DNA of 64,000 nt from Chrysemys picta bellii (lineage: Eukaryota): the NCBI RefSeq assembly GCF_011386835.1, contig NC_088807.1, forward strand, positions 1,426,001 to 1,490,000. Reading direction: 5' to 3'. The position numbers and the translations under genes were made by a program. The notes below the pieces were generated by a model. That model was not told the origin of the DNA, did not search any database, and worked only from the letters and a program-made list of their open reading frames with translations. Positions 37,170-62,794 of the stretch are shown here, in pieces. Numbering within the stretch: the stretch's first letter is position 1; every line of letters begins with the position of its first letter.

Positions 37170-37580
37170 TGTCCTGACCGAGATCAGGGCCCCGTCGCGC
37201 CGGGCGCTGCCCAGACCCCAGCAGAGATCATGGCCCCGTCGTGCCGGGCGCTGCCCAGACCCCAGCCGAGGTCGGGGCCCCGTCGTGCCAGGCGCCGCCC
37301 AGACCCTGATAGATATCAGGGTCCCATCGCGCCGGGCACTGCCCAGACCCCAGCCGAGATGGGGGCCCCGTCGCGCCGGGTGCTGCCCAGACCCCAGCCG
37401 AGATCGGGGTCCCATCGTGCCGGGGGCTGCCCAGACCCTGACAGAAATCAGGGTCCCATCGCGCCAGGCGCTGCCCAGACCCCAGACGAGATGGGGGCCC
37501 CGTCATGCCGGGCGCTGCCCAGACCCTGACAGAGATCAGGGCCCCGTTGGTCCCGGCGCTGCCCAGACCCGGGCTGGGCG
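37170..37580. repeat. ~43-bp tandem repeat (dispersed family also at 8395-8540, 12320-12405, 44460-44625)
   Basis: GCCGGGCGCTGCCCAGACCCCAGCCGAGATC(A/G)GGG(C/T)CCC(G/A)TCG repeated. Confidence 0.85.
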
Positions 37581-39168: not shown

Positions 39169-42100
39169 AACAAGCCGTGGAAGAAACTCAAGAGCATGGT
39201 CCACTGGTCGCCTTTCGTCGTGTCCTTCAAGAAGCGCTACCCCTGGGTGCAGCTGGCCGGCCATGCGGGTGAGAGGGGCCGCGGGAACGGGGGGCACGGT
39301 AAGCCCGTGCGGGGAGGGGAGCTCTGCTGGGGGGTGCAGCCAGCCCCGATGGTGGCTGGCGAAGGCAGTGCCGTGTGCCCAGCGGGCACGGGCCGGGGTG
39401 TGTCCATGCTCCCCTGACCCCAGCCATCCCCTCCTTCCCCCGCAGGGAATTTCAAAGCCGGGGACTACGGGCGGATCCTGAAGAAGTTCTGCCCGCGGGA
39501 GCAGCAGTGCCTGGAGCGCCTCATGCGGGACTCACTGCGCCCCCACGTGCCCACCTACTTCGGGCTGGCGCAGCGGGACGGCGAGCGCTACAACCAGATG
39601 GAGGATCTGCTGGCCAGCTTCGAGACGCCCTCCATCATGGACTGCAAGATGGGGGTCAGGTGAGAACCTGGCTGCGTGGCACAGGCAAGCTGCCTCAGCG
39701 AGAGAACCCAGGAGTCCTGGCTCCCAGCCCCCCTGCTCTAATCACTAGCCCCCACTCCCCTCCCAGAGCCGGGAGAGAACCCAGGAGTCCTGGCTCCCAG
39801 CCCCCCTGCTCTAATCACTAGCCCCCACTCCCCTCCCAGAGCCGGGGAGAGAACCCAGGAGTCCTGGCTCCCAGCCCCCCCTGCTCTAACCCACTAGCCC
39901 CCACTCCCCTCCCAGAGCCGGGGAGAGAACCCAGGAGTCCTGGCTCCCAGCCCCCTCCTCTAACCACTATCCCCCACAGCCGGGGTAGAACCCAGGAGCC
40001 CTGCGCTGGGAGTGCCAGAGCCAAGGGCTGGCTGAGGCATGGGCCGTGGGGTGAGCGCCCCCGGCTGATCCCCGCTCTGCCCCCCGCAGGACGTACCTGG
40101 AGGAAGAGCTGGAGCAAGCTCGCCAGCGGCCCCGGCTGCGCTGTGACATGTACGAGAAGATGGTGGCGGTGGACCCGGGGGCGCCCACGCCCGAGGAGCA
40201 TGCCCAGCGCGCCGTGCTCAAACCCCGTTACATGCAGTGGAGGGAGTCGCTCAGCTCCACCGCCACGCTGGGCTTTCGCATCGAGGGCATCAAGGTGGGG
40301 GCCACGAGCTGGGGCCGAGCTAGCCTGGCTGGGGGGTCACATCTGGCTGGGGCAGAGCTAGGCTGGCTGGAGCAGGGGCGTCTGGCTCTGGGGAGGGGAG
40401 ATCACGTCTGGCTGGAGCAGGGGCGTCTGGCTCTGGGGAGGGGAGATCACGTCTGGCTGGGGCAGGGGCGTCTGGCTCTGGGGAGGGGAGATCACGTCTG
40501 GCTGGGGCAGGGGCGTCTGGCTCTGGGGAGGGGAGATCACGTCTGGCTGGGGCAGGGGCGTCTGGCTCTGGGGAGGGGAGATCACGTCTGGCTGGGGCAG
40601 GGGCGTCTGGCTCTGGGGAGGGGAGATCACGTCTGGCTGGGGCAGGGGCGTCTGGCTCTGGGGAGGGGAGATCACGTCTGGCTGGGGCAGGGGCGTCTGG
40701 CTCTGGGGAGGGGAGATCACGTCTGGCTGGGGCAGGGCTGGTTCTAGGGGCAGCGGGTCTGACTGGGGCACGTGCGTCCCCCTCGGCCCCCCATGCCCCG
40801 GCCTGACGGGTCTCTGTGTCCCCAGAAAGCTGACGGCACCTGCAGCACCAACTTCAAGAAGACGCGGCTGCCCGAGCAGGTGGTGCAGGCACTGGGCGAC
40901 TTCGTGGACGGCGACAGAACCATTCTGGTGAGGGGCTGGGCTCCCCGGTGGTGCTGCTGGCCCTGGGTGGGGGGGCATCGCCCAGAGCTTGGGCTTTTCG
41001 CTGCCAAGATGCAGCCAGCTCTGGGGTACAGTACAGCGGCTGGCTAGTATCTGTGTGACTTTTGTTTCAACCAGCATGCGGCAGCACAGCGCCCCCTAGT
41101 GCTGTCCTAGCGCCAGCCCTGCCTGCCAGGGGAGAGCGCCCCCTGCTGAGCCCCCATCCCACAGCCCCCCAACACTACCGTGGTGCCAGCACCTGCCGAT
41201 CGGGCCAGCCGCATTCCCCTCCCTGCCAGGGCCCAGACGGGCTGGGCCTCGCTAGTGCTCAGGTGGGTCCCGCAGCGCCTTCGCCCCCTGCTGGCCTCCT
41301 GCAGCTACCTCGGCCTCACCTGTCCACCTCCCCTCTTCCTCCCCAGACAAACTACCTGGGCCGCTTGAAGGAGCTGCGGGCGGCGCTGGAGCAGTCCGAG
41401 TTCTTCAAGACCCACGAGGTAGGTTCTGGCTGGGTGTGGGGCTGAGGGAGGCGGCAGGCCTGTGGGGGAGGCGCTCCCTGACGAGTGGGGGGCCCAGCCA
41501 GTGGCCCTCGCCCTGGGGATCTGGGCCCATGCGCCAGGATGCAGGGTCTGTTCTCCTGCCCCCTGGCAGCCCCGGGTCCGTAGGAAGCAACACGTCTCCC
41601 CTCTGGCCACGCCTGGATGCGCTGGGTTCTACAGCGCCTGCCTCCTGTGGATCCCAGAGCAATGAATGGACCCAGGAGTCCTGGCTCCCAGCCCCCCTGC
41701 TCTAACCACTAGACCCCACTCCCTTCCCAGAGCTGGGGAGAGAATCCAGGAGTCCAGCCTCCCTCCGCCCCCCTGCTCTAACCACTAGACCCCACTCACC
41801 TCCCAGAGCTGGGGATAGAACCCAGGAGTCCTGGCTCCCAGCCCCCCTGCTCTAACCCACCAGAGCCCACTCCGCTCTCAGAGCCGGGGAGAGAACCCAG
41901 GAGTCCAGCCTCCCTCCCCCCCCCCGCTCTAACCACTAGACCCCGCTCCCCTCCCAGAGCTGGGGAGAGAACCCAGGAGTCCTGGCTCCCAGCCCCCCAC
42001 TCACTGAGCTCTGTGTTTGCCCCCCGACAGGTGGTGGGGAGCTCTCTGCTGTTTGTCCATGACCGGACGGGGCTGGCCAAGGTCTGGATGATCGACTTCG

Positions 42101-44392: not shown

Positions 44393-45142
44393 GCATGTTT
44401 GCTGGGCATGGGTTAAAGTTCCCAAGTTCACTGTATGACAGCAGCTCTAGAGAACCGAGACCATCGCGCCGGGCGCTGCCCAGACCCCACCTGAGATCAG
44501 GCCCCGTCGCGCCGGGCGCTGCCCAGACCCCTCCCGAGATCAGGGCCGCGTCGGACCGGGCGCTGCCCAGACCCCGCCCGAGATCAGGGCCCCATCGGAC
44601 CGGGCGCTGCCCAGACCCCGACTGAGAGCCAGTCCCTGCTCTCAAGAGCTAACAGTGGCGGGTGGCAGACAGGAAGCGTTAAGTTATTTTCAGAGCCGGC
44701 CACAAGTACCTGCCGTTTCCTGGCGCCGTGGCCCCAAACCAGGAATCTGGGACATTCTGAAAAGCGTCACTGGGTAGAAGAGCAGTAGTGCCTCTGGAGA
44801 GGGCCTGAAATAGCTGCTCCTCCCCCATGGCCGCAGCCCGGCGGGCATCAGCAAAAAGGGGCCGGGGCCGCACCCGGCACTTTAACCCCAGCGGCTGTCT
44901 CCTCAGTGGGTCTGAGTATGCTACGCTCTGCCCCTCCCTGTGCACCGCTCCGTCTCCAGGCACCTGCAAAGGAGGGCAGGATCATTGGCCCCATTTTGCA
45001 GAGAGGAAACTGAGGCACAGAGAGGGGAAGAGCGGCAGAGCCAGGCCCCCCCGAGTCCCAGATCAGTGCTCCACCCACTAGGCCCCACTGTCCCTTGTAG
45101 CATGGGCAGGGAGTTTGCAGCAGGCGGGCGCTCCGGTGGCGC

Positions 45143-48100
45143 CTAGCGCTCGGCAGCAGGGGGGGGCCCGGCTGGCTGGGGCAGGGCGCTCGGTGCGGTC
45201 CGTGGGTGCAGCAGCACGGTCTTGCCGCAGAGCCCTGCCCTCACGCCTCCCGCGGGCACCACGTAGACCTTGCCGTCGCCCGCCCGCTTGGGGCAGAAGT
45301 CGGTCAGCTGGGCGTTGCTCTCGTGTGCCTGCCGGTAGCTCCACAGCTGGGGGCGCCAGCTCTTGCCCTGCTTGGAGAGCAGGTAGATCTCCAGCACGTC
45401 CTCCGGGGCAGGCGGGGGGCAGGCTGGGCTGGGGTGGAAGAGGCCGGCGATCTCCCCGTCCTCCTGGCAGGCCGGGCTGAGGGCGCCGCCCCTGAGGCCC
45501 AGCAGGAGTCCTGCAGGAGGAGAGGAGCTAGCCAGTCTCCCCAGGGCAGTTCCATCCTGTCCGAGCCCCGCCACGCCCCTGGGATCACCGGGCCAGTGCG
45601 GGGGGCAGCCCCTCCGGACGGGTCCCCGAGAGTCGGCCCGTGCCTGGCCAGCTGCCGCCCCCTTGTGGCGAGCCTTGGAAATGCAGCCAGGCCAACTCGC
45701 CCTCCTGGTTTCTTTCTCCCTGTGCCAAGGGGCGGGTGCAGGAAGCCCGGCTCTGAGCGGGGTTGTCCCCATGCCCCAGGCCTGGGGGAGTTTGGGGGTG
45801 GACCGGGGCAGGTCGCGGTGGCTGCAGGGAGCTGCCTGGGAGCAGGGCAAACGGCCTGGGCAGGAGGGGTCGAAGCCCCGTTCTCCGCAGCCCCATCCCC
45901 CGCCCGGACGTACCTGAGACGACGGCCCAGTGGGCTCTGTAGCCGCGTCTCCTGCAGGGCTCGTGGTTGGAGTCCTCGTCGTAGCTGGGAGGGCCGTTAA
46001 GGTTTGCCAAGGGGGCTGTGGTGGGCCGGCTGGCGAGGCAGGGGCACGTGGGGAGAGCAGGCCGCCCCAGCTCCAGGCACCCGGCTCCTGCCCCTGGAGA
46101 AGTGCGCTCCCCGCAAGCGCTGACTGGGCACACATGGGGCCGCTAAACCTCTCCAACCAGAGAGGGGCTGGAGCATCAAATCTGTTGTCTGTACCTGCGG
46201 GCTCTGGACGCCACCGCAACGGCTGCCTCGGAAGGGTGGGGCACAGGGGGGCAGGCGTGGGTGGGGCATTTAACCACTGGGAGGGAGAAGGCACCTGCCC
46301 CACATTCATTCCGCCCCCCGCCCTACTGCAGCCAGGAAGAGGAGACACGAGAGATGTGACCACATCCCACCCCAGAAGTGGCCGCATCTGCCTCTAAAAG
46401 GACCCCACCAGGCCCGCTCTACGGGGTATCAGAACCGCGCCAGCCCTGCCCACGCGTGCAGGCTGCGGTGCGGATCCCAGGGGGTCACCGCGCAGGGAAG
46501 GATACGGCAGTAGCAGGGGGCAGCCAGCGGTCAGATGGCGAAGGATCCTGCCTCGGTTCTCTCCCTCGAGACCTCCCGAGAGCAGCTCGGCCCGGCACTG
46601 GAACAGCTCCTCGGCCAGCTGGGCCATGTCAGCCGCTGGGATGGACAGGGACAGGAATTCAAGCTGCCCCAGGGCCCACCCCCAGCAGCGCAGCCCGAGC
46701 TCGGCTCATGGCCCCTGGCTTCCGGCTCCCCTAAGCAGCGCTCCGAAGACGCGCCGCCCATCCGCCACGGGCTCTGCAGCCTAGCAAAGGGCGGACATGA
46801 CCCAGCGCCTGGGAGGTGAAGCTGGATAAATTCAGACAGGAAACGGGCACAGATTTGTAACAGGAGGGGAAGGAACCATTGGAACGATTTCCCGAGGGCC
46901 GCGGCGGGTTCTCCGGCACTGGAGCTGTTGAAATCAAGCTGGGCTGTTTTTCGGAAAGCTCCTATTCACACGGGAGTGAATTCAGGCAAGGCCCGTGTTC
47001 TGCGGGAGGTCGGACCAGCTGCTCCCAACGGTCCCTGCCGGCCTGAGACTCCCCCCAGTGAGAGAACACACAACGCTGGCCCCTGGCCCCGTGGCATTTA
47101 TACAGGCCGGGCTCACTGGGACCTGCACTCAGGATTTTATCAGCAGCCCAACGAGAGCTGGTGTTTTTCCTGACAAAGCTCCACCTCCTGGAGTCCCGGG
47201 ATTCCACAAAATCCTCACCTTTCATTGAAAATACAAGTGTCCAGCCCTGCAGGCTGTGGAGAAAAGGTGAATCCCCGGCCCCAAGTGCTCGGTATACGCC
47301 ATGGTCTCGGACTACTCAGGGCCGGCATTAGCGAGGCTCCCGCCGCCTGCCCTGGCTTCCAGAGGAACCTTCTGCCTCGGACAGAAACCTCCAAGCGCTC
47401 ACTCCTCGCGGGAAATTAACAGCCCAGCTGCGGGGGGTTTTCACCTAAATCAAGGAGCTTGCAAGTTTTCAAGCAAACTAATCCCGCGGGGGGCACAGAA
47501 GTGGGAGCTGCTGACGTGCAGAGAGCAGGGTTCAGAGAATAAGGCTGGAAGGGACAATTAGACCATCTAGTCTGACCTCCTCTCCAGCCCAGACACCCAG
47601 CTCTCCCTGCATCGAGCCCCTCCGGGAAGGTGTCCGGTCCCGAGCAACGCTCTAAGGGCCAGAGACCGAACTCCAGCAAGGCAGGAGCAAAGCCCTCATG
47701 CCCTGCGCTACGTACCGCCTCTGGGCACGTCCTCACGCAGTCACAACCCAGACCGGGCCCTGGAGGCTCCCCCCGGGGCCCAGCCCAGCTCCCGGGGCCT
47801 AGTGCAAGGAGGGAGTTTTGAACCCCCCCAGTCACTGACCTGAGAACATTTCCCCTTGGGCGGTGTAGCCTCTCTCCAGCGCCACCTGCACGATCCTCTC
47901 CAGGGAGACGTCCTGGGACAGACTGAGGAGGGAGCCCGCCATCCACAGCGCCACCAGCCCGCACCTAGCGGGGGAGAGAAGAGACATTGCAGGGAGCCTG
48001 GGTCCCACGGGCTGAGCTCGGCCAGTCCCCCTCCCAGGGCGCTGGGTTCAGAGACGGGAGTTTCTCTGCCAGCCTTGGAACGCTTCCTTGGGTTCCTGTG

Positions 48101-51100
48101 TCCTTAGGCCTCCCCCTGCAGCCTGGGGCGCGGGTCACCGGCTGGGCTCATCTGGGCACGTCTCACTCAGTCGATTCCCTGCCATCACAGGGGCCTGGGG
48201 CAGCGGTGGCACCTCGGTGGCTCCTGTTCCCTGCCTGGGCTCACCAGAGCTTAGCCCCGAGGACTGAAATGCTTTGCTCGAACTCAACTCGCTGGGCTCA
48301 CACGTCTGTACATCCAGGAGATCAGGTGACATGAGCGAACGGGCCGTCTGGCCACAGATGCTAGCTCCAGCAAGGCCTTCATTCCTCCAGGGGAGGGGAT
48401 GGCTCGCTGAGGCTATGCCCCTTCCCCCCAGGCTGGAGTTCGGGGGAGCTCCCGCTTTGCCTGGGGGCACCTGTTTAAGATGGAAAAGGCCAGGTGTGGG
48501 GTTTTTAAAGGCAGATCCCGAGTCGGACGTTAAGTTTAGACCAACTCGTCCGCCCTTGTGCCACCTGCTCACGATCCTTTTCCCTCTGACGCAGTGAGTA
48601 ACGTTCCCCCGGCCCTTTGTGCGCTTGCCCGTAAACATCCGCACGGCTCCCTCCTCGGCCTCCTGCGCCCGCTGGGAAACGCTCCTTTGCCGGGACGCCT
48701 CCAACAGACTTCCCAGCGGTTAGGCCGCTGGTGGGCGGAGATCCCTGCCCGCCACGCCAGTGGTACAGCCTCCTTGATTCCCGTGCTCCCTGTCCGTCTG
48801 CATCGGCCGGCTCTTCTCTTAGGTCTCTGGGGCGGGGACTGTCTTTTGGGAGGTTTATACAGGACCTGGCCCAATGGGGGCTGGGTCCATGGTTGGGCTG
48901 CCAAGGTGCTACCGTAATACAGCAGCTGGCCTAGGCTGGCCACGCCTATGCTCCCCCGATGCCCAGGCACAAAAGAGCTCTTGGCAAGTGCTTGGGAGGG
49001 ATCAAGCAGGGGAAGCTGTAGATGCATGGGACTGAGACCCCTGCCCCAGCCCCCTGGGTGGCCCCAGCCCCCGGGGTAAAGCTGCCTCCGGCTGCGTTTG
49101 CCCTGACAGAGAGGAAGCGGTTGCAATACTCACTGAGGCCCCTCTTGGATTAAGGAAGGCACCGCCCTGTTGTAGAGGAGCCACTTGAAATGCCCGCTAA
49201 AGCTGGAAGACAGAACCAAGCAAACACTTACTGGCCATTTGCCGTCCAGCCCCCACCCGCCAGCACTTCCTCCTCTGCACAATGAATGAGACGCTCTCTT
49301 TAAGCAGAGGGCTGACTTCAGCTGCCTCTGGGACTGCGGCTACCTCTGGGCTGTCTGACGGCCACACGGCAATGCCCCACTATGGGACAGGAAGTGGCCC
49401 ACGGCCCTGTACCCAGTTGTCCCTGCAGAGGGAATTTAGGGAGGCAAAATGGAATTAGCTCAGTTAAGGCCTGGCCAGGACACCTGGGTTCACCACACCT
49501 GGACGTTGAGGCAAAGAGCAGAGGCTAGGAACTAGGTTTTATGTTTCTTTTAAATTATGGGCACCTCCAGCAACACAGAGACCTCTACTGTCACCCTGAG
49601 GATTAGGGTCAGGGCTGATTGTGAGGGGAGAGCACCCCGTGCAGAGCCCCCAGCCCAGCGCCCCCTAGCACCGCCCTGGGGCCAGCCCTGCCTGCCAGGG
49701 GAGAGCGCCCCCTGCTGAGCCCCCAGCCCCATAGCACAGCGCCCCCTAGTGCCGCCCTGGGGCCAGCCCTGCTTGCCAGGGGAGAGCGTCCCCACTGCCC
49801 CCGCCCCATAGCACAGCACCCCCTAGCGCCGCCCTGGGGCCAGCCCTGCCTGCCAGGGGAGAGCGTCCCCGCTGCCCCCGCCCCATAGCACAGCGCCCCC
49901 TAGTGCCGCCCTGGGGCCAGCCCTGCCTGCCAGGGGAGAGCGTCCCCTGCTGAGCCCCCAGCCCCATAGCACAGCACCCCCTAGCGCCGCCCTGGGGTCA
50001 GCCCTGCCTGCCAGGGGAGAGCGTCCCCGCTGCCCCCGCCCCATAGCACAGCGCCCCCTAGCGCCGCCCTGGGGCCAGCCCTGCCTGCCAGGGGAGAGCG
50101 TCCCCGCTGCCCCCGCCCCATAGCACAGCGCCCCCTAGCGCCGCCCTGGGGCCAGCCCTGCCTGCCAGGGGAGAGCGTCCCCACTGCCCCCGCCCCATAG
50201 CACAGCGCCCCCTAGCGCCGCCCTGGGGCCAGCCCTGCTTGCCAGGGGAGAGCGTCCCCACTGCCCCCGCCCCATAGCACAGCACCCCCTAGCGCCGCCC
50301 TGGGGCCAGCCCTGCCTGCCAGGGGAGAGCGTCCCCGCTGCCCCCGCCCCATAGCACAGCGCCCCCTAGCGCCGCCCTGGGGCCAGCCCTGCCTGCCAGG
50401 GGAGAGCGCCCCCTGCTGAGCCCCCAGCCCCATAGCACAGCGCCCCCTAGCGCCGCCCTGGGGTCAGCCCTGCCTGCCAGGGGAGAGCGCCCCCTGCTGA
50501 GCCCCCAGCCCCATAGCACAGCGCCCCCTAGTGCCGCCCTGGGGCCAGCCCTGCCTGCCAGGGGAGAGCGTCCCCGCTGCCCCCGCCCCATAGCACAGCA
50601 CCCCCTAGCGCCGCCCTGGGGCCAGCCCTGCCTGCCAGGGGAGAGCGTCCCCTGCTGAGCCCCCAGCCCCATAGCACAGCACCCCCTAGCGCCGCCCTGG
50701 GGTCAGCCCTGCCTGCCAGGGGAGAGCGTCCCCGCTGCCCCCGCCCCATAGCACAGCGCCCCCTAGCGCCGCCCTGGGGCCAGCCCTGCCTGTCAGGGGA
50801 GAGCGTCCCCGCTGCCCCCGCCCCATAGCACAGCGCCCCCTAGCGCCGCCCTGGGGCCAGCCCTGCCTGCCAGGGGAGAGCGTCCCCACTGCCCCCGCCC
50901 CATAGCACAGCGCCCCCTAGCGCCGCCCTGGGGCCAGCCCTGCTTGCCAGGGGAGAGCGTCCCCACTGCCCCCGCCCCATAGCACAGCACCCCCTAGCGC
51001 CGCCCTGGGGCCAGCCCTGCCTGCCAGGGGAGAGCGTCCCCGCTGCCCCCGCCCCATAGCACAGCGCCCCCTAGCGCCGCCCTGGGGCCAGCCCTGCCTG

Positions 51101-54100
51101 CCAGGGGAGAGCGCCCCCTGCTGAGCCCCCAGCCCCATAGCACAGCGCCCCCTAGCGCCGCCCTGGGGTCAGCCCTGCCTGCCAGGGGAGAGCGCCCCCT
51201 GCTGAGCCCCCAGCCCCATAGCACAGCGCCCCCTAGTGCCGCCCTGGGGCCAGCCCTGCCTGCCAGGGGAGAGCGTCCCCGCTGCCCCCGCCCCATAGCA
51301 CAGCACCCCCTAGCGCCGCCCTGGGGTCAGCCCTGCCTGCCAGGGGAGAGCGCCCCCTGCTGAGCCCCCAGCCCCATAGCACAGCGCCCCCTAGTGCCGC
51401 CCTGGGGCCAGCCCTGCCTGCCAGGGGAGAGCGTCCCCGCTGCCCCCGCCCCATAGCACAGCACCCCCTAGCGCCGCCCTGGGGTCAGCCCTGCCTGCCA
51501 GGGGAGAGCGCCCCCTGCTGAGCCCCCAGCCCCATAGCACAGCGCCCCCTAGTGCCGCCCTGGGGCCAGCCCTGCCTGCCAGGGGAGAGCGTCCCCACTG
51601 CCCCCGCCCCATAGCACAGCACCCCCTAGCGCCGCCCTGGGGCCAGCCCTGCCTGCCAGGGGAGAGCGCCCCCTGCTGAGCCCCCAGCCCCATAGCACAG
51701 CGCCCCCTAGTGCCGCCCTGGGGCCAGCCCTGCCTGCCAGGGGAGAGCGTCCCCGCTGCCCCCGCCCCATAGCACAGCACCCCCTAGCGCCGCCCTGGGG
51801 CCAGCCCTGCCTGCCAGGGGAGAGCGTCCCCGCTGCCCCCGCCCCATAGCACAGCGCCCCCTAGTGCCGCCCTGGGGCCAGCCCTGCCTGCCAGGGGAGA
51901 GCGTCCCCTGCTGAGCCCCCAGCCCCATAGCACAGCACCCCCTAGCGCCGCCCTGGGGTCAGCCCTGCCTGCCAGGGGAGAGCGTCCCCGCTGCCCCCGC
52001 CCCATAGCACAGCGCCCCCTAGCGCCGCCCTGGGGCCAGCCCTGCCTGCCAGGGGAGAGCGTCCCCACTGCCCCCGCCCCATAGCACAGCGCCCCCTAGC
52101 GCCGCCCTGGGGCCAGCCCTGCCTGCCAGGGGAGAGCGCCCCCTGCTGCCCCCGCCCCATAGCACAGCGCCCCCTAGTGCCGCCCTGGGGCCAGCCCTGC
52201 CTGCCAGGGGAGAGCGTCCCCGCTGCCCCCGCCCCATAGCACAGCGCCCCCTAGCGCCGCCCTGGGGCCAGCCCTGCCTGCCAGGGAGAGCGTCCCCGCT
52301 GCCCCCGCCCATAGCACAGCGCCCCCTAGCGCCGCCCTGGGGCCAGCCCTGCCTGCCAGGGGAGAGCGTCCCCGCTGCCCCCGCCCCATAGCACAGCGCC
52401 CCCTAGTGCCGCCCTGGGGCCAGCCCTGCCTGCCAGGGAGAGCGTCCCCTGCTGAGCCCCCCAGCCCCATAGCACAGCACCCCCTAGCGCCGCCCTGGGG
52501 TCAGCCCTGCCTGCCAGGGGAGAGCGTCCCCGCTGCCCCCGCCCCATAGCACAGCGCCCCCTAGCGCCGCCCTGGGGCCAGCACTGCCTGCCAGGGGAGA
52601 GCGTCCCCACTGCCCCCGCCCCATAGCACAGCGCCCCCTAGCGCCGCCCTGGGGCCAGCCCTGCCTGCCAGGGGAGAGCGTCCCCGCTGCCCCCGCCCCA
52701 TAGCACAGCGCCCCCTAGTGCCGCCCTGGGGCCAGCCCTGCCTGCCAGGGGAGAGCGTCCCCTGCTGCCCCCGCCCCATAGCACAGCGCCCCCTAGTGCC
52801 GCCCTGGGGCCAGCCCTGCCTGCCAGGGGAGAGCGTCCCCTGCTGAGCCCCCAGCCCCATAGCACAGCACCCCCTAGTGCCGCCCTGGGGCCAGCCCTGC
52901 CTGCCAGGGGAGAGCGTCCCCGCTGCCCCCGCCCCATAGCACAGCGCCCCCTAGCGCCGCCCTGGGGCCAGCCCTGCCTGCCAGGGGAGAGCGTCCCCTG
53001 CTGAGCCCCCAGCCCCATAGCACAGCACCCCCTAGTGCCGCCCTGGGGCCAGCCCTGCCTGCCAGGGGAGAGCGTCCCCTGCTGAGCCCCAGCCCCATAG
53101 CACAGCACCCCCTAGTGCCGCCCTGGGGCCAGCCCTGCCTGCCAGGGGAGAGCGTCCCCGCTGCCCCCGCCCCATAGCACAGCGCCCCCTAGCGCCGCCC
53201 TGGGGCCAGCCCTGCCTGCCAGGGGAGAGCGTCCCCGCTGCCCCCGCCCCATAGCACAGCGCCCCCTAGTGCCGCCCTGGGGCCAGCCCTGCCTGCCAGG
53301 GGAGAGCGTCCCCTGCTGCCCCCGCCCCATAGCACAGCGCCCCCTAGTGCCGCCCTGGGGCCAGCCCTGCCTGCCAGGGGAGAGCGTCCCCGCTGCCCCC
53401 GCCCCATAGCACAGCGCCCCCTAGCGCCGCCCTGGGGCCAGCCCTGCCTGCCAGGGGAGAGCGTCCCCTGCTGAGCCCCCAGCCCCATAGCACAGCACCC
53501 CCTAGTGCCGCCCTGGGGCCAGCCCTGCCTGCCAGGGAGAGCGTCCCCTGCTGCCCCCGCCCCATAGCACAGCACCCCTAGTGCCGCCCTGGGGCCAGCC
53601 CTGCCTGCCAGGGGAGAGCGTCCCCGCTGCCCCCGCCCCATAGCACAGCGCCCCCTAGCGCCGCCCTGGGGCCAGCCCTGCTGCCAGGGGAGAGCGCCCC
53701 CTGCTGAGCCCCCAGCCCCATAGCACAGCGCCCCCTAGTGCCGCCCTGGGGCCAGCCCTGCCTGCCAGGGGAGAGCGCCCCCTGCTGCCCCCGCCCCATA
53801 GCACAGCGCCCCCTAGCGCCGCCCTGGGGCCAGCCCTGCCTGCCAGGGGAGAGCGTCCCCACTGCCCCCGCCCCTTGCAGCATGGGCCCCCTAGCGCCGC
53901 CCTGGGGCCAGCCCTGCCTGCCAGGGGAGAGCGCCCCCTGCTGCCCCCGCCCCATAGCACAGCGCCCCCTAGCGCCGCCCTGGGGCCAGCCCTGCCTGCC
54001 AGGGGAGAGCGTCCCCGCTGCCCCCGCCCCATAGCACAGCGCCCCCTAGTGCCGCCCTGGGGCCAGCCCTGCCTGCCAGGGGAGAGCGTCCCCTGCTGCC

Positions 54101-57100
54101 CCCGCCCCATAGCACAGCGCCCCCTAGTGCCGCCCTGGGGCCAGCCCTGCCTGCCAGGGGAGAGCGTCCCCTGCTGAGCCCCCAGCCCCATAGCACAGCA
54201 CCCCCTAGTGCCGCCCTGGGGCCAGCCCTGCCTGCCAGGGGAGAGCGTCCCCGCTGCCCCCGCCCCATAGCACAGCGCCCCCTAGCGCCGCCCTGGGGCC
54301 AGCCCTGCCTGCCAGGGGAGAGCGTCCCCTGCTGAGCCCCCAGCCCCATAGCACAGCACCCCCTAGTGCCGCCCTGGGGCCAGCCCTGCCTGCCAGGGGA
54401 GAGCGTCCCCTGCTGAGCCCCCAGCCCCATAGCACAGCACCCCCTAGTGCCGCCCTGGGGCCAGCCCTGCCTGCCAGGGGAGAGCGTCCCCGCTGCCCCC
54501 GCCCCATAGCACAGCGCCCCCTAGCGCCGCCCTGGGGCCAGCCCTGCTGCCAGGGGAGAGCGTCCCCGCTGCCCCCGCCCCATAGCACAGCGCCCCCTAG
54601 TGCCGCCCTGGGGCCAGCCCTGCCTGCCAGGGGAGAGCGTCCCCTGCTGCCCCCGCCCCATAGCACAGCGCCCCCTAGTGCCGCCCTGGGGCCAGCCCTG
54701 CCTGCCAGGGGAGAGCGTCCCCGCTGCCCCCGCCCCATAGCACAGCGCCCCCTAGCGCCGCCCTGGGGCCAGCCCTGCCTGCCAGGGGAGAGCGCCCCCT
54801 GCTGCCCCCGCCCCATAGCACAGCGCCCCCTAGCGCCGCCCTGGGGCCAGCCCTGCCTGCCAGGGGAGAGCGTCCCCACTGCCCCCGCCCCTTGCAGCAT
54901 GGGCCCCCTAGCGCCGCCTGGGGCCAGCCCTGCCTGCCAGGGGAGAGCGTCCCCTGCTGAGCCCCCAGCCCCATAGCACAGCACCCCCTAGTGCCGCCCT
55001 GGGGCCAGCCCTGCCTGCCAGGGGAGAGCGTCCCCGCTGCCCCCGCCCCATAGCACAGCGCCCCCTAGCGCCGCCCTGGGCCAGCCCTGCCTGCCAGGGG
55101 AGAGCGTCCCCTGCTGAGCCCCCAGCCCCATAGCACAGCACCCCCTAGTGCCGCCCTGGGGCCAGCCCTGCCTGCCAGGGAGAGCGTCCCCTGCTGAGCC
55201 CCCAGCCCCATAGCACAGCACCCCCTAGTGCCGCCCTGGGGCCAGCCCTGCCTGCCAGGGGAGAGCGTCCCCGCTGCCCCCGCCCCATAGCACAGCGCCC
55301 CCTAGCGCCGCCCTGGGGCCAGCCCTGCCTGCCAGGGGAGAGCGTCCCCGCTGCCCCGCCCCATAGCACAGCGCCCCTAGTGCCGCCCTGGGGCCAGCCC
55401 TGCCTGCCAGGGGAGAGCGTCCCCTGCTGCCCCCGCCCCATAGCACAGCGCCCCCTAGTGCCGCCCTGGGGCCAGCCCTGCCTGCCAGGGGAGAGCGTCC
55501 CCACTGCCCCGCCCCATAGCACAGCACCCCCTAGCGCCGCCCTGGGGCCAGCCCTGCCTGCCAGGGGAGAGCGTCCCCTGCTGAGCCCCCAGCCCCATAG
55601 CACAGCACCCCCTAGTGCCGCCCTGGGGCCAGCCCTGCCTGCCAGGGGAGAGCGTCCCCTGCTGAGCCCCCAGCCCCATAGCACAGCACCCCCTAGTGCC
55701 GCCCTGGGGCCAGCCCTGCCTGCCAGGGGAGAGCGTCCCCGCTGCCCCCGCCCCATAGCACAGCGCCCCCTAGCGCCGCCCTGGGGCCAGCCCTGCCTGC
55801 CAGGGGAGAGCGCCCCCTGCTGCCCCCGCCCCATAGCACAGCGCCCCCTAGCGCCGCCCTGGGGCCAGCCCTGCCTGCCAGGGGAGAGCGTCCCCTGCTG
55901 AGCCCCCAGCCCCATAGCACAGCACCCCCTAGTGCCGCCCTGGGGCCAGCCCTGCCTGCCAGGGGAGAGCGTCCCCTGCTGAGCCCCCAGCCCCATAGCA
56001 CAGCACCCCCTAGTGCCGCCCTGGGGCCAGCCCTGCCTGCCAGGGGAGAGCGTCCCCGCTGCCCCCGCCCCATAGCACAGCGCCCCCTAGCGCCGCCCTG
56101 GGGCCAGCCCTGCCTGCCAGGGGAGAGCGTCCCCGCTGCCCCCGCCCCATAGCACAGCGCCCCCTAGTGCCGCCCTGGGGCCAGCCCTGCCTGCCAGGGG
56201 AGAGCGTCCCCTGCTGCCCCCGCCCCATAGCACAGCGCCCCCTAGTGCCGCCCTGGGGCCAGCCCTGCCTGCCAGGGGAGAGCGTCCCCACTGCCCCCGC
56301 CCCATAGCACAGCACCCCCTAGCGCCGCCCTGGGGCCAGCCCTGCCTGCCAGGGGAGAGCGTCCCCTGCTGAGCCCCCAGCCCCATAGCACAGCACCCCC
56401 TAGTGCCGCCCTGGGGCCAGCCCTGCCTGCCAGGGGAGAGCGTCCCCGCTGCCCCCGCCCCATAGCACAGCACCCCCTAGCGCCGCCCTGGGGCCAGCCC
56501 TGCCTGCCAGGGGAGAGCGCCCCCTGCTGAGCCCCCAGCCCCATAGCACAGCACCCCCTAGCGCCGCCCTGGGGTCAGCCCTGCCTGCCAGGGGAGAGCG
56601 TCCCCGCTGCCCCCGCCCCATAGCACAGCGCCCCCTAGCGCCGCCCTGGGGCCAGCCCTGCTTGCCAGGGGAGAGCGTCCCCACTGCCCCCGCCCCATAG
56701 CACAGCACCCCCTAGCGCCGCCCTGGGGCCAGCCCTGCCTGCCAGGGGAGAGCGTCCCCTGCTGAGCCCCCAGCCCCATAGCACAGCGCCCCCTAGCGCC
56801 GCCCTGGGGCCAGCCCTGCCTGCCAGGGGAGAGCGCCCCCTGCTGCCCCCGCCCCATAGCACAGCGCCCCCTAGCGCCGCCCTGGGGCCAGCCCTGCCTG
56901 CCAGGGGAGAGCGTCCCCACTGCCCCCGCCCCTTGCAGCATGGGCCCCCCGGCCCCTGGGTTCTGCCCGGCGCGTCGCCCGCCCGGCCCCAGCCCCGCTC
57001 AGCGGGCGCGAGCGGCCCGGGGATCCCGGCCCGGGGCCCGACCTGGATTTCCTGCGGCTCAGCAGGTGCCGGACGTCGTCCCCGCTGCCGGGCGCCGGGG

Positions 57101-57260
57101 CCGCTCGCTCCAGCGCCGCCTTGAAGAACTTGGCCTTGTCGAGCCCGTAGGGGGGCAGCGGCCTGGGTGGGGGAGGGGGCGGTGGTGGGGCAGGTGGGGG
57201 AGGGGCAGGGCCCTGCTGGGGGGCAGGAGGGGGTGGGGGCATCCCCCCCCTGTGGGCCAT
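45143..57260 (-). CDS. ACTMAP: Actin maturation protease (C19orf54), about 320-326 aa
   Basis: Exons (minus): 57260 (or 57242)-57043, 49202-49134, 47964-47840, 46635-46506, 45984-45914, 45510-45143, with consistent phases. Motifs: poly-Pro N-terminus, PSLIQEGPQCGLVALWMA (catalytic Cys), YDEDSNHEPC...AHWAV, KQGKSW. The start codon is uncertain. Confidence 0.93.
49650..56945. repeat. 7.3-kb macro/minisatellite, 77-80 bp unit, about 93 copies, filling an ACTMAP intron
   Basis: Unit CAGCGCCCCCTAG(C/T)GCCGCCCTGGGGCCAGCCCTGCCTGCCAGGGGAGAGCG(T/C)CCCC(G/T)GCTG(CCCCCG/AGCCCCCAG)CCCCATAGCA. It shares a ~35-bp core with the 10760-11860 array. Confidence 0.97.
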
Positions 57261-57479
57261 CCCCCCCCGCCTCCGGGGTTGGGGGGCAGCAGGAGGTGAA
57301 AGGGCACAGATTAGAACCAAGGTCACCAGGGCATAGGTTAGAGGTCAGGGGTCACAGGTCAGCTCGCGGGGGTCAGGGGTCACCGCGGGGTAGGGGCGTG
57401 GCCTGGCGGGGTCGGAGGTCATGGGGCCAGGGTCGCCGCTGGGGGCGGCTCAGGGCCCCGCCCGCCCCGCGTCCGGCTC

Positions 57480-57979
57480 GTGCCCCTCCTAAAATGGCGG
57501 CCGCCGGCGGAGCGGGCAGCGGCGGGGTGAGTCCGATCACGTGATTGGATACCAGCCACCCGCTTCCCTCCTCTCAGCCGCCCCTTCCGCGTCGCGTGAC
57601 AAATACCGCCAATCAAATGTGAGAACAGCGGTTACTGACACCTCCAATCAGCCAATGGCCGGCTCTTGTGCGGTAGGCGGGAACTGCCGAGCCGAACACC
57701 AAATCCGAATGCGGCTTGCCTGAGGGGGGCGGGGTAACGCTGAAGAACCGCCTCCTGATTGGTCATTGTGCAGGCCCTGGCACTGCTTTGATTGGCCTGC
57801 CACACACGCGGCCGTAGGCCTTTCATTGGCCGGCGCCGGCGAGGCGTCCTTTTATAGGCTCATAAGTCCGAGGCTGCTTCGTCGTGATTGGCCCGCGCGG
57901 AGAGTGGGCGGGGTTGTCTCTCGGCGGGCTCCTGTGGCGGCGGGCGGCGCTGCGAGGCCTGGGCCTGCGGACTCCATCG
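57480..57979. promoter_or_regulatory. ACTMAP/SNRPA bidirectional CpG promoter with SNRPA non-coding first exon (about 57900-57979)
   Basis: Eight CCAAT boxes (57544, 57609, 57644, 57652, 57758, 57791, 57825, 57887), a YY1-type AAAATGGCGGC at 57491, and a CG|GTGAGG donor at 57980. Confidence 0.75.
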
Positions 57980-58603
57980 GTGAGGGGCCGCGGCGGGGCG
58001 GCGCCATCGGGCCGCGGGGCCGGGGGGGATCGGGCCGGGGGGCAGCGCCCGGCCTGTGTGACCCAGTATGGCCGGGCTCGGGGGGGGGGCGGCGGGGCCG
58101 CAGCCACCGGAGCCGTCCGGGGGGGCGGGGCTTATCCGGGCCCCGCCCCCTGAGCCCCACTTCCGGTTCAGGGCTGCAGCCTGTATCCCCCTCCCCCACT
58201 GGGGGCGGGGCGGTGTCCCTGGGGGCGGGGCCTGGCGCCCCTCGAGGGCTCCCCTGGGGGTGGGGAGGGGGCCCGTTCTCCCCCGCCTGGGGGGGCGCCT
58301 GGCCAGGCCGTGGCAGGAGCTGGGGTGCTGGTAGCCCCCAGGGACCGGCCTGGGGGGGTCCCCTGGTGGTGGGGGAGGGGCCCGAGACCCCAGGCTGCTT
58401 CCCTCCCCCCCCCCCCCCGCCAGGTCTTGGCCCCAGCCCCCCACCCCAAGCTGTCTCCCCCGAACATGGCGTCTGGCTTGGCCGGAGGCGGCGCTCCGGG
58501 GTGGGATTAACCCCAGTCCTGCGCTGCTGGGATCGCTGCCTCCAGCTCCTCGCACTGGTCTCGCCCTCGCCCCGGCAGCACCCGCTGGGTGGGGATCGTC
58601 TGA

Positions 58604-60829
<2,226 letters not shown>

Positions 60830-61166
60830 AGCGCCCCCCCCTTCTCCCCAAGCCCAGAACTGCCCCTCCCCACTCCCCCGTTAGTCTGTTCTGAACCAGG
60901 CCCCCCCTGTTTTTTATCAGTTCCCTGGAAGGTAAGTCTGCCCTCAGGGCCAGCCGGATTACCAGCCCCAAACACCCCCATTCCCCTGAGCCTTGGAACT
61001 GACGGTGTGGAAGTGTCCCCCCTGCACGCCATGCTGCCTTGCTGCTCAGAGTGGGTAAGTGACTCTGGAGCGCCCCCAGCTGGTGATCTCTGCGTCTGCG
61101 ACAAGCCTGGAGCTGGTTCGTGGCGGGATGGTTGGTACAGGGGGTGGGGGCGGCTACTACCCTCCT

Positions 61167-61215
61167 GAAGCATTGTACCCAGAGTCTGCTGCTCAGACAT
61201 TGCACCTGGCGCTCT
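61167..61215 (+). promoter_or_regulatory. U1A polyadenylation inhibition element (PIE RNA)
   Basis: GAAGC-ATTGTAC-CCAG-AGTCTG...CAGAC-ATTGCAC-CTGG-C-GCT. Two U1A-binding heptamers (61172-78 and 61199-205) sit in the known stem arrangement, 10 nt before AATAAA. Confidence 0.93.
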
Positions 61216-61224
61216 CTGTTCTGT

Positions 61225-61230
61225 AATAAA
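61225..61230 (+). terminator. SNRPA poly(A) signal
   Basis: AATAAA directly after the PIE, preceded by TGTA. Confidence 0.9.
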
Positions 61231-62794
61231 AGCTCCTTTGTGACCCCCCCTTTGCCGCGACTGGCCTGTTCCTCGCTTGGCTTCCCGGTGGGGTGGGGTG
61301 AAATCGACCCGCCGGATTCTCTGCGTGGGAGTCTGAGCCTGTGTCCTGAGAGATGGCTCTGAGCCAAGCCCCCAGGCAGGGGCGGGAGCTGAAGGGAATT
61401 ACTCCCAGCCCAGTGATTGTGAAATTGGTGAATTCTGGGCTTACCCCACCACTATCCCAGAAGGCTTTGGGGGGGGCTTGTCTGGTCCGAGCAGCTTGTC
61501 CCTGCTGCCTTTAACACGGAGCCTAGAGATGCGAGGATGCACGGCTGCGTGGAGCATCGCATGCTGGGAGAGAACAGGGTGAAGCGGGTGCCTGGGAGGG
61601 GTCAGGCGCCCAGTGCGGAAGAGGCATCACCAGGGGCTGGGGTTTGACTATGGAGGTCCCCCCCCCGAGGTGACTGCCTACCTCCTCCATTGGGTTCAGA
61701 GCTAGTCTGTTCCCCCCCCGGCTGCCTGAGAGAAGCCCTGCAGTTGCTGGGGGTCCGAGGCTTCCTAGCAGCCCCCCGTGGGTGGGACTCATCCCCGGCT
61801 CTTGGCGGGGGGGGGGGGGGTCTGATGTGTTGAGTCACAGAGCACAGGAAACTGGCGCTGGCACGAGCTAGTACTTGTGCCACGTAGTGACCTGGTGCCA
61901 TCTGCCTCAAAGTGGGATCCCACTGCTGCCACAAGGAGCTTCTGAAGTGAGGGGGGCTTCAGGGGCCTCCCCCTCCCACACAGGGCTGGGGGTGGGGGGG
62001 AGCTTTGACAGTGCAGCTTCTTGGCAGGGTCCTACCCCTCTGTGGGCCTCCGCTGTAGTGAGCCTTGGGACAATGGGCCCAGTATGTTACCCGAGAGCCG
62101 GCCCCTGCGTCAGCAGCCGGCCCCGCTCGCCCTCGCTCCCGCCTTGAGTTTGTGGCACTGGATGATTTTAAAAAGCGGAGCGGAAGGGGGCAGAGAATTC
62201 GGAGCTGGTGACTTGGCCGTGCCCCTCTGCCGGGGGATGGGATTCTGTCTCCCCTCCTCTCGCGCTCTCTGCGCGGCCTGGCGTGAAGACTGCTGGTCTG
62301 TTGTGGACATGCAGCCACCTCTGGGTTGGACTGAAGCAGCACCAGCAGTACGCGGTCGGAGGCAACCGGCCCCGAGGCTAGAGAAGGGCTTTGCCCCGGC
62401 TGGTGTCTGGGACGTGCATCCCCGAGGGCTGGGGGAGCGGGAATGGTCAGGACGCAGGGGCGACGTTCTATCCAAAACCTGGTACCTGCTCCTGGTAGCA
62501 TGGCCCCCTGACAGCCGCGGGGTCCCCCATTGGCAGAACGGCCCCCCAGTGCAGCTGCGGGGCTCAGCCTTCACTCAGGAAAGGGCGCCCCCTAGTGCCA
62601 GCCAAGGCTCGGCACCGCCATGGGGGCAAGGGGCCCCCTGCCGGAGGAATCGGCACCTGCTCTGCCCAATGGGGTGGCTGCTCCGGGATCTCCGAAAAGG
62701 GCTCAGGGCGGTGACTAGAAACACAGCTGGGGCGGGCCGCGCTGCCCTCCCTGTGGGGGCAGTCTGAGCCCGGGGCGGCTGCATTTCGCCCACC

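What the first reader, a model, noticed from the sequence alone, without database searches (positions are those of the whole stretch)
49650..56945. 7.3-kb CTCF-motif macrosatellite inside ACTMAP, abutting the ACTMAP/SNRPA promoter
About 93 units each carry CAGC(G/A)CCCCCTAG(T/C)G (reverse core CACTAGGGGGCGCTG), and many also carry GAGCGCCCCCTGCTGA. That gives on the order of 100 same-orientation CTCF-like sites, all CpG-containing. The array shares its core and 77-bp period with the COQ8B array, and monomers occur at about 41085-41150 and 62585. This points to a dispersed, amplifying family of motif-carrying satellites that could create methylation-sensitive, copy-number-variable chromatin boundaries, conceptually like DXZ4/Firre. 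I do not know of a description of this for reptiles.
Basis: partly seen in the sequence, partly recalled or inferred. Interest (0 to 1): 0.75.

Follow-up and report, generated by a model that had tools for sequence, protein, structure and literature searches.

The report
Fast-evolving CTCF-like minisatellite in ACTMAP intron
A real 7.3-kb run of 93 short GC-rich repeats fills the first intron of the painted turtle's ACTMAP gene beside the shared ACTMAP/SNRPA promoter, but its CTCF-like motifs are only moderate matches and other turtles carry from about 1 to 35 copies, so it looks like an unstable minisatellite, not a proven chromatin barrier.

Summary
The array lies at 49,652-56,932, with 93 units of 75-81 bp at 94% identity. 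All motifs share one orientation.

The details are weaker than stated:
- 88 units carry the first core.
- Only 10 carry the exact second core; 43 carry a loose form.
- No site matches the 15-base CTCF consensus perfectly; 38 sites are one mismatch away.
- The unit size makes it a minisatellite, not a macrosatellite.

The array fills 93% of ACTMAP intron 1. It starts 110 bp past the exon-1 donor and ends 1.8 kb from the SNRPA start codon.

I fetched the same locus from eight other turtle assemblies. It sits at the same position in hard-shelled (cryptodiran) turtles, but copy number varies widely:
- Relics of about 1.5 units in Pangshura and Gopherus.
- About 13-35 copies in Chelonia and Caretta, and shorter arrays in the other sea turtles.
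- A 461-bp difference between two hawksbill assemblies.
- Nothing in a side-necked turtle.

Within the array the CTCF-like cores vary most, and CpG is depleted. My best reading is a neutral, recently expanded VNTR that grew from a unit carrying CTCF sites. CTCF binding is possible but untested.

The scan has already noted many CTCF-motif minisatellites elsewhere in this genome.

The parts
49652..56932 (-). Minisatellite array of 93 units of 75-81 bp. It is GC 77% and C-rich on the + strand. CTCF-like cores read on the minus strand, which is the ACTMAP sense strand. A degenerate partial unit starts near 49,619.
   Evidence: TRF; unit split; unit alignment; motif counts; composition
49203..57042 (-). 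ACTMAP intron 1, 7,840 bp. The array makes up 93% of it.
   Evidence: Donor AG|GT at 57,043/57,042. Acceptor before 49,202. The annotated isoform X1 protein P0218 reads ...RRKS|SFSGHFKW... across this junction.
57043..57260 (-). Coding part of ACTMAP exon 1, with the start codon at 57,260-57,258.
   Evidence: ORF. The exon-1 peptide hits actin maturation proteases just upstream of their ACTMAP-like_C domain. The annotated CDS start of L002 maps to window 57,260.
49134..49202 (-). ACTMAP exon 2, 69 nt.
   Evidence: Sequence; 86-100% conserved in tblastn against eight turtle loci; P0218
46397..48047 (-). Region holding the two ACTMAP exons that encode the ACTMAP-like_C domain, inside the ORFs 47,835-48,047 and 46,397-46,705.
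   Evidence: Pfam PF21646, E 1.8e-13 and 2.1e-7
56933..58741 (.). CpG-rich divergent ACTMAP/SNRPA promoter region. It has eight CCAAT/ATTGG boxes at 57,544-57,891 and a YY1-like AAAATGGCGGC at 57,491. It has no CTCF-like site of 13 bits or more.
   Evidence: CpG o/e 0.68; box positions; sequence; PWM scan. Promoter role is inferred from gene orientation, not shown by RNA data.
58742..60829 (+). SNRPA (U1A) coding region.
   Evidence: RRM_1 exons; annotated gene range in L002 mapped through; exon ORFs
61163..61238 (+). U1A polyadenylation inhibition element in the SNRPA 3'UTR. It identifies the gene as SNRPA.
   Evidence: Rfam RF00460, 68.3 bits, E 1.3e-13
10766..11858 (-). Homologous array of about 14 copies, 68-77 bp each, in an intron of the ABC1-kinase gene in the COQ8B position. 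It carries 10 perfect CTCF consensus 15-mers.
   Evidence: TRF; ABC1 exons at 13.4-16.1 kb on the minus strand
41083..41297 (-). Solo family unit (41,083-41,160) plus decayed remains in an ITPKC intron. Other turtles carry 2 to about 15 units here.
   Evidence: orthologous arrays

Best explanation
This is a lineage-specific, recently expanded GC-rich minisatellite (VNTR). It grew by unequal exchange or replication slippage from a 1-2-unit seed in ACTMAP intron 1. The seed unit, about 80 bp, carried two CTCF-type sites. The same unit family also sits in neighbouring ITPKC and COQ8B introns.

In the painted turtle lineage the seed grew to 93 copies. The dominant unit type has lost the better of the two sites, and the remaining cores are decaying at CpGs. 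The array is therefore most likely methylated intronic DNA with no required function.

Its practical effects, all inferred:
- It lengthens ACTMAP intron 1 about thirteen-fold compared with tortoises.
- It places a G-rich stretch on the sense strand right after exon 1.
- It offers many weak-to-moderate CTCF/BORIS sites that could be occupied if unmethylated.

Shown: the anatomy, positional orthology, copy-number turnover and motif quality. Inferred: methylation, neutrality and any protein binding.
For: Recent block duplication: identical stretches of 200 bp or more recur at offsets of 705 and 1,331 bp, and few variants are private to one unit.

Variation by part of the unit: diversity is 0.060 in site A, 0.141 in site B and 0.016 in the 28-bp spacer. 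The derived 77-bp unit with a destroyed site B makes up about 50 of 93 units. The solo unit and the COQ8B array keep site B intact.

CpG: observed/expected is 0.39, against 0.68 in the adjacent promoter. High-frequency CpG-to-TpG/CpA variants occur inside the cores.

Comparative data on ACTMAP intron 1:
- Chrysemys: 7,843 bp.
- Platysternon: 1,769 bp.
- Pangshura: 630 bp, relic only.
- Gopherus: 589 bp, relic only.
- Caretta: 3,060 bp, 34.6 x 75 bp.
- Chelonia: 1,862 bp, 13 x 87 bp.
- Lepidochelys: 1,248 bp.
- Emydura: 327 bp, no family sequence.

A shared 3' anchor lies 413-486 bp before exon 2 in eight of the nine cryptodire assemblies; the search did not find it in Gopherus. Two Eretmochelys assemblies differ by 461 bp inside the array, with flanks 97.6-99% identical. 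No species has a site of 18 bits or more in this array. Unit consensus identity between Chrysemys and sea turtles is 88-92%, against 84-85% for unique intron flank, so there is no clear extra constraint.
Against: - Both CTCF-type cores are still recognisable in arrays of lineages that split roughly 100 My ago (the date is from my own knowledge of turtle phylogeny).
- 38 sites within one mismatch of the consensus, packed into 7.3 kb next to a promoter, could give real occupancy.
- The same genome holds many other CTCF-motif minisatellites (scan notes). That hints at a non-random process.
- CpG depletion is partly built into the unit, so it is not independent evidence from each copy.
- Within-array diversity reflects homogenisation as well as selection.
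- No methylation, binding or contact data could be obtained.
Confidence: 0.6

Rival explanations
1. The array is a working, one-directional CTCF (and germline BORIS) platform. Many co-oriented sites spaced 31-47 bp apart would stall cohesin arriving from the ACTMAP/ITPKC/COQ8B side. That would shield the ACTMAP/SNRPA promoter, with strength set by copy number and methylation.
For: - 88 site-A and 43 site-B cores, all on the minus strand.
- 38 sites within one mismatch of the consensus, with a window-wide excess of 63 against 5.2 expected.
- Spacing of 46-47 and 31-34 bp fits the under-100-bp rule described for paired '2xCTS' sites near active promoters (PMC5973138).
- A 21.7-bit forward site at 17,143 is convergent with the array.
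- Turtle CTCF binds sites predicted from mammalian motifs, and its binding was lost when 5mC rose (PMC5481183).
- The cores are retained in sea-turtle arrays.
Against: - There are no perfect consensus sites. The best site scores 16.5 of 26 bits.
- Summed naive affinity is about 0.7 of one strong site.
- Single sites elsewhere in the window are stronger.
- The cores are the most variable part of the unit.
- CpG o/e is 0.39.
- Gopherus keeps only a relic whose best score is 2.2 bits, and Emydura has nothing.
- The PWM was recalled from memory, so bit scores are approximate.
Confidence: 0.2
2. The main effect of the array is structural. It puts 7.3 kb of G-rich sense-strand DNA just after exon 1, which would favour R-loops or G-quadruplexes and so modulate ACTMAP elongation or promoter-proximal chromatin. 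The CTCF resemblance would be incidental.
For: - GC skew is -0.24 on the + strand, so the ACTMAP non-template strand is G-rich.
- 23% of 25-nt windows reach G4Hunter 1.5 or more on that strand, against 7% window-wide.
- GC-rich, G4-forming minisatellites are known to be unstable (PMC3486850, listed).
Against: - No canonical G4 with loops of 7 nt or less is present.
- Species with 0-1.5 units keep the same gene arrangement.
- No RNA or R-loop data are available.
Confidence: 0.1
3. The length of the array in this assembly is an artefact of over- or under-expansion during assembly of a perfect repeat.
For: Perfectly identical blocks of more than 500 bp occur at offsets of 705 and 1,331 bp. This is the kind of structure assemblers can miscount.
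Against: - The window contains no N.
- 39 distinct unit types occur in a non-periodic order.
- Independent long arrays sit at the same position in five other assemblies.
- The presence of the array is therefore secure. Only the exact copy number is open.
Confidence: 0.07
4. The unit is part of a transposable element that spreads CTCF sites, as SINE B2 does in rodents.
For: Three loci of the family lie within 46 kb, all in the same orientation. Scan notes report other CTCF-motif minisatellites in the genome.
Against: - The flanks of the three loci share no similarity.
- The unit is unrelated to the abundant 74-bp SINE-like repeats (z about 0).
- The loci are old and positionally orthologous across turtles.
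Confidence: 0.03

Closest known systems
GC-rich human-type minisatellites / VNTRs (for example CEB1, CEB25, HRAS1; PMC3486850, PMC8096271)
   Same: Unit of 10-100 bp, GC-rich with strand asymmetry, interspersed unit variants, block duplications, and rapid copy-number change between species and between two assemblies of one species.
   Different: The unit carries two CTCF-type cores. The array fills a first intron 110 bp from the exon-1 donor, beside a divergent promoter. At 7.3 kb it is long for a minisatellite.
DXZ4 / ICCE / FIRRE tandem repeats that bind CTCF on the mammalian inactive X (PMC3491370, PMC6125249, PMC4820808)
   Same: Tandem, co-oriented CTCF motifs containing CpG. Copy number varies, and the sequence turns over quickly while the motif is retained.
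   Different: Those units are hundreds of bp to 3 kb, their binding and long-range contacts are shown by experiment, and they are tied to X inactivation. Here units are 77-81 bp, motifs are weaker, nothing is shown in vivo, and two lineages have all but lost the array.
Paired '2xCTS' CTCF/BORIS sites near active promoters (PMC5973138)
   Same: Adjacent same-family motifs less than 100 bp apart, next to a CpG-island promoter. BORIS exists in amniotes, so it could be relevant in the turtle germline.
   Different: 2xCTS are pairs of robust motifs. This is up to about 130 moderate or weak motifs in series.
Tandem arrays of one transcription-factor site in imprinting control regions and first introns (H19 ICR CTCF sites, Peg3 intron-1 YY1 array; PMC2665242)
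   Same: An array of a single site type in a first intron beside a divergent promoter. The sequence is poorly conserved while the motif persists.
   Different: Those arrays hold 4 to about 10 sites whose number is roughly conserved, and binding is proven. Imprinting is not known in turtles (my own knowledge).
CTCF-motif-rich satellites in primates (gamma satellite, rDNA spacers; bioRxiv 10.64898/2026.07.18.739380)
   Same: GC-rich tandem repeats enriched for CTCF motifs, with likely occupancy depending on methylation state.
   Different: Those are pericentromeric or acrocentric, with a monomer of about 215 bp. This array is genic and euchromatic.
47-48-bp CTCF-motif minisatellites noted elsewhere in this genome by the scan (s1-322502, s1-322505, s1-318396)
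   Same: Same genome, co-oriented CTCF motifs in short tandem units, and lineage-specific copy number.
   Different: Those are reported with one near-perfect site per unit. This array has two weaker sites per 77-81-bp unit. I could not compare the sequences.

Membership tests
Minisatellite / VNTR | Head-to-tail units of roughly 10-100 bp | tested here: met
   93 units of 75-81 bp
Minisatellite / VNTR | Copy number varies between genomes | tested here: met
   Copy number runs from about 1.5 to 93 units across cryptodires. Two Eretmochelys assemblies differ by 461 bp.
Minisatellite / VNTR | Interspersed unit variants and block duplications from unequal exchange | tested here: met
   39 unit types; identical blocks at offsets of 705 and 1,331 bp
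Macrosatellite (DXZ4 class) | Unit of about 1 kb or more | tested here: not met
   Unit is 77-81 bp
CTCF-bound tandem-repeat boundary (DXZ4 / FIRRE / ICCE) | A CTCF motif in most units | tested here: inconclusive
   88 of 93 units have a site-A core and 43 have a site-B core. None is a perfect 15-mer, 38 are within one mismatch, and scores are 8.8-16.5 of 26 bits on a PWM recalled from memory.
CTCF-bound tandem-repeat boundary (DXZ4 / FIRRE / ICCE) | CTCF occupancy in vivo | not testable with these tools
CTCF-bound tandem-repeat boundary (DXZ4 / FIRRE / ICCE) | Insulation or long-range looping at the array | not testable with these tools
   No Hi-C data were available. The only pointer is orientation logic: a convergent forward site at 17,143.
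CTCF-bound tandem-repeat boundary (DXZ4 / FIRRE / ICCE) | Array and motif retained across related species | tested here: inconclusive
   The position is orthologous in cryptodires and the cores are retained in sea turtles. Pangshura has one 13-bit site, Gopherus has no site above 2.2 bits, and Emydura has no family sequence.
2xCTS clustered CTCF/BORIS sites | Two or more motifs less than 100 bp apart | tested here: met
   Spacing is 46-47 bp from A to B and 31-34 bp from B to the next A.
CpG island | CpG observed/expected above 0.6 | tested here: not met
   0.39 in the array against 0.68 in the adjacent promoter
Transposon-borne CTCF sites (SINE B2 type) | Copies share element sequence beyond the motif-bearing unit | tested here: not met
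   Flanks of the three loci are unrelated. The unit is unrelated to the 74-bp SINE-like repeat.

The most novel reading that the evidence does not exclude
In emydid and sea turtles the expanded array is a copy-number-tunable, methylation-sensitive, one-directional CTCF/BORIS barrier. It would shield the ACTMAP/SNRPA promoter from the ITPKC/COQ8B side. It would be one example of a turtle-wide habit of building insulators by expanding minisatellites seeded at CTCF sites, perhaps because bound CTCF sites are prone to breakage and duplication.
Probability: 0.12. Interest if true: 0.7.

Novelty: new member of a known kind. Interest (0 to 1): 0.35.

Why it matters
If the array did bind CTCF, turtles would offer a natural dosage series. 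The same site carries 0, about 1.5, 13, 35 or 93 repeat units in different species. That series could show how the number of clustered CTCF sites relates to insulation strength.

On present evidence the array is mainly a well-documented case of minisatellite birth, expansion and decay at one orthologous intron. It also cautions that a high count of CTCF-like motifs in a tandem repeat does not by itself indicate a boundary element.

I found no description of such arrays in reptiles in the searchable literature.

Tried and rejected
- Link to the abundant 74-bp SINE-like tandem repeats in the window: alignment is no better than shuffles (z 0.2-0.3).
- Origin of the unit by internal duplication of a site-bearing half: only the shared 10-mer aligns, and 248 of 1,000 shuffles do as well.
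- A larger transposon around the unit: the flanks are unrelated.
- The '62,585 monomer': not a family member.
- Two scans of metagenome contigs for the unit: no hits. This was expected, since that collection is not vertebrate DNA.
- Pfam on ACTMAP exons 1 and 2 and the last COQ8B-like exon: no hit.
- Word search with the 151-aa exon-1 ORF: no hit, probably because proline-rich words swamped it.
- Contig look-ups for a chimpanzee protein and a bat protein: not on record.
- Canonical short-loop G4 motif: none found.
- A joined, spliced ACTMAP model was not built or searched. Exon 1 was searched alone by reference. The exon-1/exon-2 junction was read from the annotated protein that a tool returned.
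The consensus-pattern counts do not depend on it.
Full report
**Source of the window.** The reverse complement of window 39,143-63,260 is identical to a locus fetched from Chrysemys picta bellii assembly GCA_011386835.2, record CM062334.1. The window is therefore painted turtle DNA. The region is GC-rich (62-77%) and gene-dense.

**The observation.**
- Tandem Repeats Finder reports one array at 49,652-56,932, period 77, 93.0 copies, 94% matches.
- Splitting on the conserved core gives 93 units: 77 bp x43, 81 bp x25, 78 bp x14. They fall into 39 distinct types.
- The second core, GAGCGCCCCCTGCTGA, occurs only 10 times exactly. A looser form occurs 43 times, and 50 units carry a derived form that destroys it.
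- The window holds 63 matches within one mismatch of the CTCF consensus CCASYAGRKGGCRSY, against 5.2 expected from shuffles.
- None of the 11 perfect matches lies in this array. Ten lie in the small array at 10.8-11.9 kb.
- In the big array 38 sites are one mismatch away, almost always at the first C.

**Motif strength.** I scored sites with a weight matrix recalled from memory (JASPAR MA0139.1), so the values are approximate.
- The array's sites score 8.8-16.5 of a possible 26 bits. The small array has ten sites at 21.7 bits.
- Treating bits as log-affinity, the whole 7.3-kb array sums to about 0.7 of one strong site, and the small array to about 10. This is a rough measure.
- Several single sites elsewhere in the window are stronger than any site in the array, for example 17,143 (+, 21.7 bits) and 45,653 (-, 21.6 bits).
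- The unit size makes this a minisatellite, not a macrosatellite.

**Gene context.**
- Pfam places ACTMAP-like_C exons on the minus strand at 47.8-48.0 and 46.4-46.7 kb.
- RRM_1 exons lie on the plus strand at 59.0-60.8 kb, and IPK exons on the plus strand at 39.4-42.2 kb.
- ABC1 kinase exons lie on the minus strand at 13.4-16.1 kb.
- Rfam finds the U1A polyadenylation inhibition element at 61,163-61,238 (68 bits). That fixes the RRM gene as SNRPA.
- The order COQ8B-like, ITPKC, ACTMAP, SNRPA matches human 19q13.2. That comparison rests on my own knowledge.

**ACTMAP exon 1 and the intron.**
- A minus-strand ORF at 57,043-57,260 looked like ACTMAP exon 1.
- Its 72-residue peptide, searched alone, found six proteins (E 3e-5 to 3e-4). 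Five carry ACTMAP-like_C just downstream of the match, and these five are named actin maturation protease.
- The annotated painted-turtle isoform X1 (P0218) begins at window 57,260. It reads straight from exon 1 into exon 2 (49,202-49,134).
- The array therefore lies in ACTMAP intron 1 (7,840 bp) and fills 93% of it.
- It starts 110 bp after the exon-1 donor. It ends 328 bp from the ACTMAP start codon and 1,810 bp from the SNRPA start codon.

**The promoter region.** The stretch between the array and SNRPA is CpG-rich (observed/expected 0.68). It holds eight CCAAT boxes and a YY1-like motif. 'Inside ACTMAP, abutting the shared promoter' is correct. Transcription start sites are inferred, not shown.

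**Internal structure.**
- Variation among units sits at a few positions, each shared by many units.
- Identical stretches of 200 bp or more recur at offsets of 705 and 1,331 bp. This is the signature of recent multi-unit duplication.
- Diversity per position is 0.060 in site A, 0.141 in site B and 0.016 in the 28-bp spacer. The CTCF-like cores are the least conserved part of the unit.
- Several of the common variants are CpG transitions.
- CpG observed/expected is 0.39, below the window mean of 0.47 and the promoter's 0.68. This points to germline methylation. The caveat is that the ratio is partly built into the unit.
- The solo unit and the COQ8B array keep site B intact. The dominant 77-bp unit with a broken site B is therefore derived, yet it has spread to about half the array.

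**The repeat family.**
- The COQ8B-intron array is clearly homologous (score 189 against 31 +/- 9 for shuffles).
- A profile of the units finds one more significant copy in the window, at 41,083-41,148 in an ITPKC intron (E 7.5e-17). The 62,585 site is not significant.
- Flanks of the three loci are unrelated, so there is no sign of a transposon carrier.
- The unit is unrelated to the 74-bp SINE-like repeats that pepper the window.

**Comparison with other turtles.** Turtle ACTMAP proteins found by the word search let me fetch the locus from eight other assemblies. Exons 1 and 2 were located by tblastn, and intron 1 was measured. All motifs lie on the ACTMAP sense strand, and none reaches 18 bits.

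| Species | Intron 1 (bp) | Array | Sites at >=10 / >=14 bits |
|---|---|---|---|
| Chrysemys | 7,843 | 93 x 77 bp | 114 / 38 |
| Platysternon | 1,769 | degenerate array; short-read assembly with one N | 13 / 4 |
| Pangshura | 630 | relic | 1 / 0 |
| Gopherus flavomarginatus | 589 | relic | 0 / 0 |
| Caretta | 3,060 | 34.6 x 75 bp | 43 / 10 |
| Chelonia | 1,862 | 13.1 x 87 bp | 26 / 13 |
| Lepidochelys | 1,248 | short array | 20 / 5 |
| Eretmochelys (two assemblies) | 1,464 and 1,003 | short arrays | not scored |
| Emydura (side-necked) | 327 | no family sequence | 0 / 0 |

- A shared 3' anchor lies 413-486 bp before exon 2 in eight of the nine cryptodire assemblies; the search missed it in Gopherus, whose intron reads alike by eye.
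- A shared 5' anchor is present in the four testudinoid species.
- The locus is therefore positionally orthologous. The distance between anchors is 86 bp in Pangshura, 1,248 bp in Platysternon and 7,317 bp in Chrysemys.
- The Pangshura and Gopherus introns show about 1.5 decayed units between the same flanks.
- The two hawksbill assemblies differ by 461 bp inside the array. Their flanks are 97.6-99% identical.
- Unit consensus identity between Chrysemys and sea turtles is 88-92%. Unique intron flank is 84-85% identical. I see no clear extra constraint on the unit.
- The ITPKC-intron locus is present in all seven species that could be examined, including Emydura. Its copy number runs from 1 to about 15.

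**Interpretation.**
- The locus is old in cryptodires. Its copy number, unit length and motif strength are not conserved.
- Either the ancestor had an array that collapsed in the tortoise/geoemydid branch, or a seed expanded independently in emydids and sea turtles. Each scenario needs two events.
- In both cases a large array is dispensable. Chrysemys simply has the largest expansion.
- Together with the variable cores and the CpG depletion, this favours a neutral, unstable VNTR that inherited CTCF-type cores from its seed (confidence 0.6).

**The barrier reading remains possible (0.2).**
- There are many co-oriented moderate sites 31-47 bp apart next to a promoter. This resembles an extreme form of the paired '2xCTS' class.
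- Turtle CTCF binds sites predicted from mammalian motifs, and that binding fell when 5mC rose.
- By the convergent-motif rule (established knowledge), minus-strand sites would face leftwards. They would pair with the forward site at 17,143, not with the co-oriented COQ8B array.

**A second side effect.** The G-rich sense strand could also matter. G4Hunter reaches 1.5 or more in 23% of windows, against 7% window-wide. No short-loop G4 motif is present.

**Literature.** Searches for CTCF with tandem repeats, satellites, turtles, reptiles or microchromosomes found no description of such arrays in reptiles. The general kind is known in mammals:
- DXZ4, ICCE and Firre.
- Clustered sites in imprinting control regions.
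- CTCF-rich gamma satellite.

The scan itself has 33 notes on CTCF-motif minisatellites elsewhere in this genome, on other DNA. I did not test those.

**Limits.**
The array length, within-species polymorphism in Chrysemys, RNA splicing and transcription starts are unchecked at read level.

Noticed in passing
window 61163-61238 (+): The U1A polyadenylation inhibition element, which is the autoregulatory structure in the SNRPA 3'UTR, is present in the turtle at 68 bits over the full model.
   Followed up: partly
window 936-1288, 7527-7929, 14074-14405, 15533-15866, 28216-28430, 33474-33853, 34998-35175, 35448-35809, 38675-38822, 39700-39977, 41670-41998: Eleven short tandem arrays (2-6 copies) of a 73-76-bp unit with tRNA-like box motifs (GGTTAGAGCA..., GGGTTCT...), in both orientations. 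This is a dispersed SINE-like family that occurs as mini-arrays. It is also seen in the Caretta locus (L001 16619-16950). It is unrelated to the CTCF-like unit.
   Followed up: partly
window 17143-17161 (+) and 45653-45671 (-): Two isolated near-consensus CTCF-type sites (about 21.7 and 21.6 bits on the recalled matrix), stronger than any site in the big array. The first is convergent with the minus-strand arrays to its right.
   Followed up: no
window 18527-20607: A 2.1-kb GGAT-rich minisatellite (83/166-bp period, about 25 copies, GC skew up to +0.7) in the 5' part of the COQ8B-like gene.
   Followed up: no
window 8408-8537, 37173-37570, 44469-44619: A second dispersed minisatellite family with a 43-44-bp unit (...GGGCGCTGCCCAGACCCCA...), seen at three loci in the window. 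A 45-bp two-copy repeat at L003 12046-12141 in Emydura looks similar.
   Followed up: no
window 40363-40737: A 45-bp minisatellite of 8.3 copies at 99% identity in an ITPKC intron, apparently a very recent expansion.
   Followed up: no
L004 13811-14429 (Pangshura tecta, ITPKC intron): The ortholog of the window's solo unit is here about 15 copies of a 41-bp unit. Each keeps one CTCF-like core of 14-15 bits, and a 19.9-bit site lies just upstream. The same family expands at different loci in different turtles.
   Followed up: partly
window 57544-57891: Eight CCAAT/ATTGG boxes within 350 bp, plus a YY1-like AAAATGGCGGC at 57,491, in the divergent ACTMAP/SNRPA promoter. The window average is 0.9 boxes per kb.
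   Followed up: partly
window 47835-48047 (-); proteins P0212, P0207: A 223-residue ACTMAP isoform that lacks exons 1-2 is annotated in Chrysemys. It is the only form annotated in two Gopherus species. This hints at an alternative start downstream of the array.
   Followed up: no
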